In this document: positions 53,709 to 56,770 of the stretch, one piece after another | Numbering within the stretch: position 1 is the first letter of the stretch | How the letters are laid out: each line of letters begins with the position of its first letter | NCBI RefSeq assembly: GCF_040938485.1 | Contig: NW_027271590.1 | Location: forward strand, 496,001-560,000 | Reading direction: 5' to 3' | DNA: 64,000 bases | Origin: Diadema antillarum | Taxonomy: Eukaryota | Made by a program: the position numbers and the translations under genes | Notes under the pieces: model-generated | Databases searched by the model: none | What the model saw: only the letters and a program-made list of their open reading frames with translations | What the model was told of the DNA's origin: nothing

Positions 53709-55257
53709 TTAATGCTTTAAAAATAATCAAATCATTAATTAGATGGAAGAGATGGCACTTTAAAAAAATGACTTTTGTAATTCTTCTGTCCTAATGTACA
53801 ATGTACATACAGGGTACAGTTTTGTCTGTGTATTGTAACATGAGTGAGTTGATGATATAATACCCTCACAACTTTTTGTGTATTCAATTAAAACTTGTAC
53901 ATCTACAAATGAAAGTCAGAAAATGTGTTATTTTTAGCTAACAAGTAAAAGCTAGTTCCCCTACCAAGATATATCAGAGTTAACATTTGCTCTTTTTTAT
54001 TTTGGGTGATTTTAAGACAAGTTTTATATTACACAGCTGAAATACGAAATTTTTGTCATTTCTGTAATCATATGAAATGAATAAGAAATTGTGAGAACAT
54101 GACATCGACAACTTGCTGATTTGAAGACTCACAGGGACTGGTCAAGAAATGTGTTAAGAAAAAATGTGAAATGTCAAAATGTCCTATCTTCTATTTTCCT
54201 ATCTTCCATTTATTTTTGTTTTTGTCATTTTTGCAATGTTCTGTAGGGAATATTTTTCTCTTTCATTTGAAATTCATTTTTTGGGTGGATTTCATCTTTA
54301 ATCATTATAGATAATGAATGATATCGATAAAAACAATAAAGACAAAAATGAAAATGAAGATGATAATAATCACCATAATAGTCATGAAATATATCTGCAC
54401 TTCTGTAATCCATGGAAGGTAGCCTCTGCAGTCATATCAATAGAGCTCTGCCATAGAGAGCCCTACCGTACAACGTACCAAAGTACCCTACAAACTGGTT
54501 TAAGAGAGACATTGTGAGCCAGACTTCTTGTCCTGGAAGGATGAATACAACACCAGCCTCACACATGTTTTGAAATCAGTACCTTCTGTATAAAAGTCTT
54601 ACAATAGTACCCATTACCTAAAAGTCTTACAAATAAAACAACACAAACTCTTTAAAAGTATTCAAAATTTCAAGTTGACATCGTCTTCAGCAGTTTTTGC
54701 TTGTTTGCTGTACAATTTGCGTTGCTTATTTCTTTTTACATTTAGTTTTACCTGTCCACATAACCTCAACTGGATGAACAGATACCCTCTTTTATACAGA
54801 CTGTATCACCAAGTGCTCTCTTTTCAAATGGTGGTTGGACTTGAATAGTCTTTATCTAACTTGATTGCCAGCCTTTTATATCAACTTTAAAAAAAAAAAA
54901 AAAATCAATTTTTTAGAGGTATCTGGTGGTAGATCACATTTGTACACAGCTCAGCAGTACCGGTACTCAAAAAATCTGCATCAAGTAGGACCTAACCATT
55001 CAGAATGCATTCCATGCAAATTTCAATTATGTGTCACTGTCTGCTTTTGTACATTTTTTTTTTTTAAGTTGTAGACATGATGGTTCTCACTAGATCTTTC
55101 ATAATATTCAGTCATCTACATGTACTCTTCTGAAGGCAGAAAGGTGCAAATTTACAACAAGACTAGACATCTATTTTTAAGTGGCTCGTAATTTTGTGGG
55201 TTTACATGATTAATACATCATACTGTGATGTGAGATGTGATGAGATAGGGCATGGCC

Positions 55258-56026
55258 TAACTGCGACCAGCCCCAACACGCAGTGTTGGGGCTGCGCATT
55301 GTAGCAGACATGATCATGACAGGCGAAGTGTAGCGCCTAAAAATCAATATGAAATCGCAAAAATTCTGCAATATGAAGACTTACAGGTGAAGATGTAATG
55401 TTGAAGACTGACTGCGTTCAACTTTTGGTTCTGGCAATAGTCCCTTTCTGCTCGGTTTGATGAGTTAAATGCGACTCGGTCGAGAGGAACTCGGGAGAAC
55501 TACATCTTATACGGTCAATGGATTTGAGATTTGTGCGCATGCGCTGGCCGTCAAGTCGTGTAGCTTTGTGGCAAGGCTTTATCATACTGTTGGCAAACCC
55601 TCTCGCTGTATATTGAGTTGCTTTCTGGGTGGGTGCGCGCGCGCAGGCCTTGTCAGAAGGCTAAACGCATTGCGACTCCGCCGGCACATGAATATTTACG
55701 TGCGCAGTGTACTGCATACTGATTTCGAAAATGGTGAATGGGATGGGGAGCTAGGACTACGGACCCGTATATGGCCGTGAAAAAAACGTTTTTTCAAGAT
55801 CATTGGACCAGTGTGAACAAGAACAAGGTGAACGAAGGGTATTAATTAGATAAGAATCTTATGTATACTATAAAAGTACGTTTTTTCCTCGTGATATTCG
55901 AAACTTACGGAGGTGCGAAAATCTGTGACAGACTGTGTATGTTTTTCAAGCTTACCGATATAGCACTCTATTGACTCAGGACGCTCCCACAGTGTGTAAC
56001 TGTGTATACGGAGCGTCCCGGGGTTA
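55258..56026. mobile_element. 769-bp non-autonomous element with 9-bp TSD and subterminal hairpins (MULE-like by TSD length; unclassified)
   Basis: Perfect flanking direct repeat ggcatggcc at 55249-55257 and 56027-56035. Termini TAAC...GTTA. Hairpins at 55268-55294 and 55979-56018. Confidence 0.8.
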
Positions 56027-56155
56027 GGCATGGCCATGGTGAAAAGAATTTAATGCTAGCCTAACGTTTCAGGTAACATGAATAGCACCAGTACGACGCT
56101 GATGAAAATTTGGTTTTGTAAACTACACTGTAAAGTGTAACATCATGCAGAAAAT

Positions 56156-56191
56156 TAACTGCGACCAGCCCCAAGGAGCGTCCTGGGGTTA
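56156..56191. mobile_element. 36-bp mini-derivative of the 55258-56026 element
   Basis: Consists of the first 19 nt and last 17 nt (one substitution) of the larger element. Flanked by gcagaaaat (56147-56155) and gtagaaaat (56192-56200). Confidence 0.8.
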
Positions 56192-56629
56192 GTAGAAAAT
56201 CAGCAACAAACAACACCATACATTTCAAAAGACACAAGGTTATAAATATCGCCTTTGACGCCGCAGTTCCCATGTTTCCAGTTGATACCCCTACCATGCT
56301 TTATTTGTACACTGTCACTGTGTAAAGATTGTAGGTTGTACCCATCGTAGAATCTAGAACTATGTTGAATTGTTCTGTCTTGATGCCCAACATTACGTCA
56401 GTCGCCCATAGCCAAGCACAGGCAGCGCAGTGCGGTGGAATGCACGGCGCATAAAGACATACTGTACAGTCGGATCCTACAGCATGCAGCAGCAGCAATC
56501 CGCCAGCAGGTCTGGCCACCGTTGCGTTAGATACAGATAAACTCGATTATTTTGAACAGCATATGTGGATAATACGTGGGATAACAAGTGCGGTGTAATA
56601 CAGTGTAATACAGAAAATCATTGACTTAC

Positions 56630-56770
56630 GTCTGTAAACCACCACGGCCAGTAGTTTTCCAAATAAGTCAGTCTGTCTTGATGAGAAGTAATTCTCAGCT
56701 CAGGATGTGATCCTCAACGTTCCGTTGGTCGCGTAGTGTGTGTGTGTATGTGCAGCAATACCGGAAGTGC
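56630..56770 (-). promoter_or_regulatory. Candidate non-coding first exon and promoter of SIPA1L
   Basis: CpG-rich zone with an ETS-type site CCGGAAGT (56761-56768) and a consensus donor C|GTAAGT at 56630/56629. The TSS position is inferred. Confidence 0.55.

What the first reader, a model, noticed from the sequence alone, without database searches (positions are those of the whole stretch)
55249..56035. 769-bp element with 9-bp TSD, 4-bp TIR and asymmetric subterminal hairpins
Seen: perfect ggcatggcc duplication on both sides and termini of only TAAC...GTTA. There is a 12-bp perfect stem with a 3-nt loop near the left end (55268-55294) and a different, interrupted stem near the right end (ggacgctcc/ggagcgtcc plus cacag/ctgtg, 55979-56018). 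Established: 9-bp TSDs typify Mutator/MULE (and some Merlin) elements, whereas subterminal hairpins without long TIRs typify Helitron/Helentron elements, which make no such TSD. The combination fits neither well. Inference: possibly an undescribed non-TIR DNA transposon family. It is CpG-rich, carries a perfect NRF1/P3A2-type site TGCGCATGCGC (55534-55544), and sits about 600 bp into the putative first intron of SIPA1L, so it may affect regulation.
Basis: partly seen in the sequence, partly recalled or inferred. Interest (0 to 1): 0.7.

Follow-up and report, generated by a model that had tools for sequence, protein, structure and literature searches.

The report
Young hairpin-ended DNA transposon, enzyme unknown
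This is a real, very recent and still polymorphic insertion of a roughly 200-copy, gene-less cut-and-paste DNA transposon whose two ends match over only four bases; elements of this kind are already known, and I could not find the enzyme that moves it.

Summary
Window 55258-56026 is a 769-bp element, TAAC...GTTA, flanked by the exact 9-bp duplication GGCATGGCC. It has a strong hairpin 4 nt inside the left end and a different one 8 nt inside the right end. Beyond 4 bp, the similarity between the ends is no better than in shuffled sequence.

The genome is a sea urchin according to earlier scan notes, which I did not verify. It holds about 200 copies that are 99.4% identical on average, and 29 of 32 have a perfect 9-bp TSD, each at a different site.

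An empty allele with a single copy of the 9-mer exists in another individual and probably in the assembled one. The insertion is therefore recent and polymorphic.

New here: insertion sites follow a palindromic motif, G-Y-W-N [GC-rich 9 bp] N-W-R-C, whose best form (GTTA..TAAC) equals the element's own tips. Other short TAAC-ended elements with 9-bp TSDs exist, so this family belongs to a wider group. Copies sit in DNA that is not depleted of CpG.

It encodes nothing. No autonomous partner was found among nine Mutator, Mutator-like and Merlin loci.

The combination "9-bp TSD, almost no TIR" has precedents: VANDAL and Curupira MULEs, and the BuT5/P element. My best reading is a non-autonomous Mutator-type (less likely P-type) transposon. 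Interest is moderate.

The parts
55249..55257 (.). left copy of the 9-bp target-site duplication GGCATGGCC
   Evidence: D15. The empty allele keeps one copy (joint 55248->56027, 9 shared letters).
55258..56026 (+). 769-bp non-coding transposon copy (TAAC...GTTA)
   Evidence: at least 40 full-length copies at 99-100% identity; 205 left ends and 159 right ends; mean pairwise identity 99.4%; no Rfam match, and no Pfam match for the four longest ORFs (53-103 aa).
55258..55261 (+). left terminus TAAC (with 56023-56026 GTTA, the only terminal inverted repeat)
   Evidence: It equals the preferred flank of the target motif.
55262..55298 (.). left subterminal hairpin: 4-bp outer stem, 2-nt bulge, 12-bp perfect stem, 3-nt loop
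   Evidence: I10.: -17.7 kcal/mol, z = -5.4. One variable site in 32 copies.
55534..55544 (.). palindromic TGCGCATGCGC (NRF1/P3A2-like motif), part of every copy
   Evidence: no variation in 32 copies. Binding or promoter function was not tested.
55979..56018 (.). right subterminal hairpin: 9-bp outer stem and 6-bp inner stem
   Evidence: I23.: -15.3 kcal/mol, z = -5.0. The inner stem loses 2 bp in the 767-bp subfamily, which still spread.
56023..56026 (+). right terminus GTTA
56027..56035 (.). right copy of the 9-bp target-site duplication
56147..56200 (+). older ends-only remnant of the same family: 19 nt of the left end plus 17 nt of the right end at 56156-56191, with TSD gcagaaaat/gtagaaaat (8 of 9)
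   Evidence: (D1, D2). Present on the X2 contig that lacks the 769-bp insertion (record 10).

Best explanation
A non-autonomous class II (cut-and-paste) DNA transposon. An enzyme encoded elsewhere, of the DDE (RNase H-like) transposase type, recognises the two different hairpin-bearing ends. It cuts at TAAC and GTTA and joins the element into a target with a 9-bp stagger. It prefers GC-rich 9-mers flanked by G-Y-W-N and N-W-R-C in CpG-rich DNA. Repair of the stagger gives the 9-bp TSD. Excision followed by interrupted gap repair leaves ends-only remnants.

The most likely enzyme is a Mutator-like (MULE) transposase of a non-TIR lineage.

Shown:
- Mobility, copy number and youth.
- The empty allele.
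- The exact 9-bp TSD.
- The target motif.
- The lack of any coding capacity.

Inferred:
- The DDE chemistry.
- The MULE assignment.
- The hairpins (palindromes in duplex DNA) acting as enzyme binding sites.
For: - 29 of 32 copies have a perfect 9-bp TSD at unrelated sites.
- An empty allele with one 9-mer is seen in X2, on a 982-nt contig that spans the site, and in X1.
- Mean pairwise identity is 99.4% and two copies are identical to this one.
- No Pfam hit for the four longest ORFs and no Rfam hit.
- The target motif is palindromic and extends 4 bp beyond each side of the TSD (p = 5e-7 at -2, 4e-6 at +4). This is expected for a symmetric transposase complex and is reported for maize Mu.
- TSD GC content is 56% against 39% in the flanks.
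- The flanks of copies are not CpG-depleted: 19 of 30 against 10 of 40 control tiles, Fisher p = 0.0016.
- Many ends-only derivatives have breakpoints inside the hairpins and carry filler bases, typical of abortive gap repair (tables 5 and 5c).
- For the MULE assignment: 9 bp is the modal MULE TSD, and non-TIR MULEs with 9-bp TSDs are described, including in an animal (Curupira).
- The genome carries intact, multi-copy Mutator-type genes. One is a 558-aa ORF in at least 9 copies near 100% identical (8 with the 558-aa frame intact). Others are 680- and 682-aa ORFs in three copies each.
- Merlins of this genome make 8-bp TSDs and have 25-33-bp TIRs starting GGCAT.
Against: - No autonomous partner was found. 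None of five Mutator-type lineages (L037, L038, L039, L067 and its 8 paralogues by coordinates) has the family's ends (checked against the lists).
- No left end diverges into other sequence at position 45, or at position 38 apart from six places I could not inspect.
- The termini do not resemble known MULE TIRs. This rests on my own knowledge.
- A P-superfamily precedent with a 3-bp TIR and 9-bp TSD exists. Earlier scan notes report many P-type elements in this genome, and P-type transposase genes were not searched.
- The end-matching test assumes that the partner shares the ends almost exactly.
Confidence: 0.42

Rival explanations
1. A non-autonomous P-superfamily element, moved by one of the genome's P-type (THAP9-like) transposases. 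It would be analogous to BuT5 and its divergent P element, which have 3-bp TIRs and 8-9-bp TSDs.
For: - BuT5/P precedent: about 1-kb non-coding copies, 3-bp TIR, 13 of 17 TSDs are 9 bp.
- P elements also have asymmetric ends, GC-rich palindromic target motifs and a preference for promoters. This rests on my own knowledge.
- Earlier scan notes (unchecked) describe several P-type families in this genome.
Against: - The TSD is 9 bp in all 32 copies sampled (29 exact, one with a single mismatch, two rearranged) and none has 10 bp; no 8-bp TSD was noticed, though 8 bp was not scored separately. BuT5 mixes 8 and 9 bp, and P elements are mostly 7-8 bp.
- No sub-TIRs were found, whereas BuT5 has 16-17-bp sub-TIRs.
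- P-type genes were not searched here, so there is no direct evidence either way.
Confidence: 0.2
2. A member of an undescribed superfamily or lineage of DNA transposons. A distinct transposase would recognise hairpin-bearing, non-inverted ends with the terminal motif TAAC, and the whole TAACT-N5-CAGCC group with 9-bp TSDs in this genome would belong to it.
For: - No partner was found among the MULE and Merlin lineages examined.
- The ends have no TIR.
- There is a wider group of TAAC-ended elements with 9-bp TSDs, with 5 independent loci against 0.7 expected.
- The element's tips equal the target flank motif. I have not seen this described for MULE or P elements; that rests on my own knowledge.
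Against: - Failure to find the partner is weak evidence.
- One relative in the group has ordinary 28-bp TIRs (L034:2251-2317).
- Every individual feature has a precedent in known superfamilies.
Confidence: 0.14
3. A Merlin or other known 8-9-bp-TSD superfamily element with degenerated TIRs.
For:
- Merlin transposase genes are abundant and intact here: 86 hits, including a 479-aa ORF in four copies.
Against: - Four Merlin lineages were examined and none shares the ends.
- Where their ends were seen, they have TIRs starting GGCAT, of at least 25 nt in L040 and 33 nt in L041. The L040 element has an 8-bp TSD.
Confidence: 0.06
4. A Helitron/Helentron-like or IS200/IS605-like element that moves as single-stranded DNA by an HUH enzyme. 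This is suggested by subterminal hairpins at unequal distances from the two ends.
For: The layout is a hairpin 4 nt from the 5' end and a hairpin 8 nt from the 3' end, with no TIR.
Against: - These mechanisms do not duplicate the target. Here 29 of 32 copies carry an exact 9-bp duplication of variable sequence, and the empty allele has one copy.
- The termini are not TC...CTRR.
- There is no fixed insertion dinucleotide.
- The 767-bp subfamily spread with a damaged inner right stem.
Confidence: 0.02

Closest known systems
Non-TIR Mutator-like elements: VANDAL (Arabidopsis and other Brassicaceae) and Curupira-1/-2 (Schistosoma)
   Same: They have a 9-bp TSD and no terminal inverted repeats or only degenerate ones. 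Curupira is listed as '9 bp, TIR none' in an animal (PMC6446971 Table 1). They transpose by cut and paste.
   Different: Those families are defined by their own MULE transposase genes, whereas no gene is linked to this family. Strong subterminal hairpins and tips that equal the target flank motif are not reported for them in what I read. There is no sequence similarity to the MULE loci of this genome that I examined.
BuT5 MITE and its divergent P element (Drosophila repleta group)
   Same: BuT5 is a non-coding element of about 1 kb with many similar copies. It has only a 3-bp TIR and TSDs of mostly 9 bp. It stayed unclassified for years until a partner sharing only the ends was found (PMC3698922).
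   Different: BuT5 has 16-17-bp imperfect sub-TIRs and mixed 8/9-bp TSDs. This family has no sub-TIR, and only 9-bp TSDs were seen in 32 copies.
Helitron / Helentron and IS200/IS605-type hairpin-ended elements
   Same: They have no TIR, and a stable hairpin a few nucleotides inside the 3' end (here in both ends).
   Different: They make no target duplication and insert at fixed short sequences. This family makes exact 9-bp TSDs at variable GC-rich sites.
Maize Mu target preference
   Same: Mu has a 9-bp TSD, a palindromic target motif that reaches beyond the TSD, GC-rich targets and insertion near gene 5' ends (CCyCyCnsnGrGrGG).
   Different: The motif here is G-Y-W-N [N9] N-W-R-C, with A/T-rich positions just outside the TSD. 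Mu has roughly 200-bp TIRs.

Membership tests
Class II cut-and-paste (DDE-type) DNA transposon, non-autonomous | Fixed-length target-site duplication of variable sequence at every copy | tested here: met
   29 of 32 copies have a perfect 9-bp TSD, one has a single mismatch and two are rearranged; none has 10 bp.
Class II cut-and-paste (DDE-type) DNA transposon, non-autonomous | Presence/absence polymorphism with a clean empty site | tested here: met
   joint 55248->56027 skipping 778 bp with 9 shared letters, in X2 (982-nt contig) and X1.
Class II cut-and-paste (DDE-type) DNA transposon, non-autonomous | No coding capacity of its own; a partner that encodes the transposase and shares the ends | tested here: inconclusive
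   No coding signal. The partner was not found. The search was limited by caps.
Mutator / MULE superfamily | TSD of 8-11 bp, typically 9 | tested here: met
Mutator / MULE superfamily | Long TIRs (tens to hundreds of bp), absent in recognised non-TIR lineages | tested here: not met
   Only a 4-bp TIR, with end similarity below the shuffle mean. This is compatible only with the non-TIR subgroup.
Mutator / MULE superfamily | Related autonomous element that encodes a MULE DDE transposase | tested here: inconclusive
   PF10551 gave 22 hits and PF20700 gave 64 hits in the genome. Four loci were read (L037, L038, L039, L067), and the 9 copies of the 558-aa family were checked by coordinates. None carries the family's ends.
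P superfamily | TSD of 7-9 bp and short-to-31-bp TIRs, with sub-terminal inverted repeats or binding sites | tested here: inconclusive
   The 9-bp TSD and 4-bp TIR fit the BuT5 precedent, but no sub-TIR was detected.
P superfamily | Partner that encodes a P/THAP9-type transposase | not tested
Merlin | TIRs of 20 bp or more (starting GG) and an 8-9-bp TSD, with an IS1595-like transposase | tested here: not met
   This element has no TIR. Merlins of this genome have TIRs starting GGCAT (at least 25 nt in L040, 33 nt in L041), the L040 element has an 8-bp TSD, and none shares the ends.
Helitron / Helentron | No TSD; insertion between A and T (or T and T); termini 5'-TC...CTRR-3' | tested here: not met
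   Exact 9-bp TSDs and termini TAAC...GTTA.
Helitron / Helentron | Hairpin about 10 nt inside the 3' end | tested here: met
   The right hairpin ends 8 nt from the 3' end. This is a resemblance of layout only.
MITE (strict sense) | Small (under about 600 bp), TIR-flanked, high-copy, homogeneous, non-coding | tested here: not met
   The family is homogeneous, non-coding and has about 200 copies. But it is 769 bp long and has no real TIR.

The most novel reading that the evidence does not exclude
The 769-bp family and the other TAAC-ended elements with 9-bp TSDs in this genome (shared left motif TAACT-N5-CAGCC) could be the non-autonomous members of an undescribed lineage, or even superfamily, of animal DNA transposons. 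Its enzyme would recognise non-inverted, hairpin-bearing ends and choose targets whose flanks mimic the transposon tips (GTTA-N9-TAAC). That would explain repeated insertion into the very same 9-bp site.
Probability: 0.14. Interest if true: 0.7.

Novelty: new member of a known kind. Interest (0 to 1): 0.38.

Why it matters
As it stands, this is a well-documented example of a currently or very recently active non-autonomous DNA transposon in a sea urchin. Insertions segregate in the population and lie preferentially in CpG-rich, probably unmethylated DNA near genes. That makes it useful as a marker and as a source of regulatory variation.

Three features make it a good test case for how a DDE transposase handles two unlike ends. 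Its ends are almost TIR-less and carry hairpins. Its target motif mirrors its own tips. And it inserts repeatedly into the same 9-bp site next to related elements.

If its enzyme proves to be a non-TIR MULE, it would extend that rare type to echinoderms. If the enzyme is neither MULE nor P, it would define a new lineage.

Tried and rejected
1. Longer 'copies' as autonomous candidates. L031 (8,039 bp), L032 (1,697 bp) and L034 (1,529 bp) are 769-bp copies with nested insertions of other transposons. In L031 the insert has its own TIRs and a 4-bp TSD, and in L032 there are two palindromic MITEs.

2. Pairing left-end and right-end lists. Only the first 100 rows of each are shown. Right ends without a listed left end (L034-L036) proved to be ordinary or rearranged copies.

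3. Patterns with an excluded base, to find ends joined to other sequence.
- One search gave none.
- One search gave one, an ordinary copy with a SNP.
- One search gave variant left ends that are minis carried inside another repeat, apart from one 771-bp full-length copy (L061).
- One search gave 9 T-variant right ends, all minis.
- One search gave six places where the left hairpin is followed by G. I could not inspect these.

4. The 66-bp 'ends-only' form reaches depth 651 in reads. I first took it for a self-mobile mini element. It is a passenger inside another multi-copy repeat (L053), so the depth says nothing about its own mobility.

5. Candidate enzymes. Three PF10551 MULE loci, four PF12762 Merlin loci and one PF20700 locus showed no end similarity and no TAAC..GTTA pair with a 9-bp TSD.

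7. Metagenome scans for the ends gave nothing, apart from two chance 19-mers.

8. Covariation in the hairpins cannot be tested because the copies are too alike. There is one variable site in the left 45 nt.

9. Two of my scripts mostly printed low-complexity noise. Only the L040 Merlin result was used.

10. Dfam and Repbase were not available.
Full report
**1. The observation**

The window shows a 769-bp block at 55258-56026. It starts TAAC, ends GTTA, and is flanked by GGCATGGCC on both sides.

The left end holds a perfect 12-bp stem with a 3-nt loop (55268-55294). Folding extends this by a further 4 bp, so the hairpin starts right after TAAC. As single-stranded DNA, 55262-55298 folds at -17.7 kcal/mol, z = -5.4, and none of 200 shuffles folds as well.

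The right end holds a different two-part stem (55979-56018; -15.3 kcal/mol, z = -5.0) that stops 8 nt before the terminus.

Local alignment of the left 70 nt against the reverse complement of the right 70 nt scores below the mean of shuffled sequence. Apart from TAAC/GTTA there is no terminal or sub-terminal inverted repeat.

The element's CpG observed/expected ratio is 1.11. The left flank has 0.29 and the whole window 0.48. TGCGCATGCGC sits at 55534-55544.

**2. It is a mobile family**

The window's own assembly has 1.75 Gb in 2,963 contigs. Earlier scan notes call it the sea urchin Diadema antillarum, which I did not verify.

- A search returned at least 40 full-length copies at 99-100% identity.
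- A 44-nt left-end pattern occurs 205 times and a 44-nt right-end pattern 159 times, with 0 in the reversed-pattern controls. The deficit of right ends is explained by a 767-bp subfamily with a 2-bp deletion inside that pattern.
- In 32 distinct copies read with flanks, 29 have a perfect 9-bp TSD, one has a single mismatch and two are rearranged. None extends to 10 bp, and all sites differ.
- Mean pairwise identity is 99.4%. Two copies are identical to the window's copy.

**3. Empty allele**

I laid Logan contigs of four public runs on 54600-56700. They show a joint from 55248 to 56027 that skips 778 bp, with 9 letters fitting either side.

- In run X2 the joint is on a 982-nt contig that spans both flanks.
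- In run X1 the joint has a flank-like depth of 12.2, while another X1 contig ends exactly at the element boundary.

The insertion is therefore absent from at least one other individual. It is probably heterozygous in the best-matching sample.

The X2 contig still carries the 36-bp ends-only remnant at 56156-56191, which is therefore older.

**4. What it does not contain**

There is no Rfam match at E <= 1. The longest ORF is 103 aa, and the four longest ORFs (53-103 aa) have no Pfam match at E <= 10. The element is non-autonomous.

**5. Target choice (new)**

I aligned 32 reconstructed empty sites. They give a palindromic pattern that reaches 4 bp beyond each side of the TSD.

| Position | Preferred base | Count of 32 |
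|---|---|---|
| -4 | G | 19 |
| -3 | T or C | 27 |
| -2 | A or T | 30 |
| +2 | A or T | 29 |
| +3 | A or G | 27 |
| +4 | C | 18 |

Chi-square p is 5e-7 at position -2 and 4e-6 at position +4.

The TSD itself is 56% GC, against 39% for the surrounding 24 bp.

The best form of the motif, GTTA-N9-TAAC, is identical to the element's own last and first four bases. Several sites have exactly gtta and/or taac next to the TSD.

This would make each TSD copy beside an inserted element a good target again. I found two cases of two different TAAC-ended elements sitting in tandem and sharing one and the same 9-mer three times over: L014 1430-2278, and the L045/L050 repeat.

Flanks of 30 copies are much less CpG-depleted than 40 control tiles. 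The median o/e is 0.82 against 0.44, and 19 of 30 against 10 of 40 exceed 0.75 (Fisher p = 0.0016). The control set is small and ad hoc.

**6. A wider group (new)**

Within the 364 kb I held, other short elements have TAAC...GTTA ends and exact 9-bp TSDs but are not this family.

- A 53-bp element at L014:1439-1491.
- A 67-bp perfect palindrome with 28-bp TIRs at L034:2251-2317.
- A 57-bp element ending GGCTA at L045:1395-1451.

The left-end motif TAACT-N5-CAGCC is shared by the 769-bp family and at least 5 independent other loci. By chance 0.7 are expected (Poisson p = 8e-4).

So TIR-bearing relatives exist, and the 769-bp family's unlike ends look like a derived state within a larger group.

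**7. Ends-only derivatives**

Reads and the assembly show many forms that keep 19-37 nt of the left end and 17-44 nt of the right end. Their breakpoints lie in or beside the hairpins, and some carry filler bases (tables 5 and 5c). This fits interrupted gap repair after excision, and so a cut-and-paste mechanism.

Two abundant forms are not evidence of self-mobility. The 66-bp form and the 55-69-bp T-variant forms each sit at one fixed site inside another multi-copy repeat.

The 767-bp subfamily has 7 of the 32 copies, each with its own TSD. It lacks 2 bp of the inner right stem, so that inner stem is not needed for transposition. Otherwise the copies are too alike to test covariation.

**8. 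Search for the enzyme**

*Longer copies.* These are nested insertions of other transposons.

*Patterns for ends joined to other sequence.* These gave only ordinary copies, passenger minis, and six places I could not read.

*Pfam families searched in the genome.*
- MULE (PF10551): 22 hits.
- Merlin (PF12762): 86 hits.
- Mutator (PF20700): 64 hits.

*Loci read.* I read eight loci.
- MULE ORFs of 1,201, 853 and 656 aa.
- A Mutator-type 558-aa ORF.
- Merlin ORFs of 479, 471, 531 and 348 aa.

None has similarity to the family's ends, and none has a TAAC..GTTA pair with a 9-bp TSD.

*The 558-aa Mutator-type gene.* It lies in an element of at least 11 kb that is present in at least 9 copies near 100% identical. 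It is the youngest Mutator-type family I saw. None of its contigs carries a perfect end of the 769-bp family, and its termini could not be read.

*The Merlins.* They have ordinary TIRs starting GGCAT, and the L040 element has an 8-bp TSD.

*Limits.* P-type transposases were not searched. This negative result is therefore weak.

**9. Comparison with what is known**

- The exact 9-bp TSD excludes Helitron/Helentron and HUH single-strand transposition, whatever the hairpin layout suggests.
- Near-absence of TIRs together with a 9-bp TSD is described for non-TIR MULEs. Examples are VANDAL, and Curupira, which PMC6446971 lists as '9 bp, TIR none, Platyhelminthes'.
- It is also described for the divergent P element and its 1-kb MITE BuT5 in Drosophila, with 3-bp TIRs and 13 of 17 TSDs at 9 bp (PMC3698922).
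- A palindromic target motif that extends beyond a 9-bp TSD is reported for maize Mu.

I rank the readings as follows.

| Reading | Confidence |
|---|---|
| Mutator-type | about 0.42 |
| P-type | 0.2 |
| Undescribed lineage | 0.14 |
| Merlin or other known superfamily | 0.06 |
| HUH (single-strand) type | 0.02 |

**10. Gene context**

The 459-aa ORF at 17769-19148 on the minus strand has no Pfam domain. It does have relatives, among them a fish protein with Rap-GAP domains (E = 1e-12, 32% identity over 38% of the query).

A SIPA1L-like gene therefore runs leftward. The element lies 36 kb upstream of that coding exon, next to a stretch that is not CpG-depleted (o/e 0.97 over the 3 kb to its right).

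Whether the element is '600 bp into intron 1' depends on an unverified non-coding exon. No expression, accessibility or methylation data were examined.

**11. Verdict**

This is a real, young, polymorphic, non-autonomous cut-and-paste transposon family with unlike hairpin-bearing ends. It is a new member of a known kind as far as I could check. Its target motif mirrors its own tips, and its mobilising enzyme has not been identified.

Noticed in passing
window 56147-56200: A 36-bp ends-only remnant of the same family (19 + 17 nt) with an 8-of-9 TSD lies 130 bp from the young copy. Its right end has CCTGGGG instead of CCCGGGG (a CpG-to-TpG change). It is present on the contig that lacks the 769-bp insertion, so it is older.
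   Followed up: partly
window 17769-19148 (minus strand): A 459-aa ORF without a Pfam domain whose relatives include a Rap_GAP protein (P0010). It is probably the large N-terminal coding exon of a SIPA1L-like gene.
   Followed up: partly
L014:1430-2278: A 53-bp TAAC...GTTA element and a 769-bp copy sit in tandem and share the same 9-mer GGAGGAACT three times. This means two insertions into exactly the same 9-bp target.
   Followed up: partly
L034:2251-2317: A 67-bp perfectly palindromic element with 28-bp TIRs TAACTATACACAGCCCAGTCGCTGTACA and an exact 9-bp TSD CCGGGTAAT. It is a TIR-bearing relative of the TAACT-N5-CAGCC group.
   Followed up: no
L045:1395-1517, also L044 and L048-L052, and L054-L057 and L059 among the loci: A multi-copy repeat carries a 57-bp TAACTACAC.CAGCC...GGTCAGGCTA element and a 55-69-bp mini of the 769-bp family side by side, sharing the TSD GTCTAGACC. 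The minis spread as passengers of that repeat.
   Followed up: partly
L067 (G000:C525:55701-63700); copies listed: A Mutator-type (PF20700/PF10551) 558-aa ORF lies inside an element of at least 11 kb. The element is present in at least 9 copies near 100% identical, and no TIR is visible within 8 kb. It looks like a recently active large MULE.
   Followed up: partly
L037:8433-8627: An array of four 29-nt palindromes (TAGGTGATACGCTATCAGCGTATCACCTA) lies 1.8 kb upstream of an intact 1,201-aa MULE ORF. These are subterminal hairpin repeats in another Mutator-type element.
   Followed up: no
L036:7118-8001: A full 769-bp copy is followed after 18 bp by an inverted plus a direct right end (7906-8001). 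The TSD is not intact. This is a rearranged copy, possibly from an aberrant transposition.
   Followed up: no
L031:941-8207: A 7.3-kb non-coding element with TIRs GGGCATTTCCACAGTAAATGGGTAGTTTT and a 4-bp TSD (ATTT) is nested in a 769-bp copy.
   Followed up: no
L008:1200-2600: A 769-bp copy is inserted in a block of telomere-like (TTAGGG)n repeat. The block is itself bounded by inverted ends AGACGGCACAGATTGGGG / CCCCAATCTGTGTCGTCT, apparently the telomere-repeat-carrying MITE noted earlier in this scan.
   Followed up: no
G000 C63:2124926, C577:65184, C589:407735, C943:346961, C1320:703433, C1382:142919: Six places where the left hairpin is followed by G instead of C, which would lengthen the stem. 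None of the four whose contigs fall within the printed part of that list (C63, C577, C589, C943) has a perfect right 44-mer there. They may be remnants or a distinct subfamily.
   Followed up: no
L040:303-6947: A 6.6-kb Merlin element carrying a 479-aa transposase ORF, with TIRs starting GGCATAATCGTGATATAGTCCCCAC and an 8-bp TSD GAACAGTG. The ORF occurs in four intact copies in the genome.
   Followed up: partly
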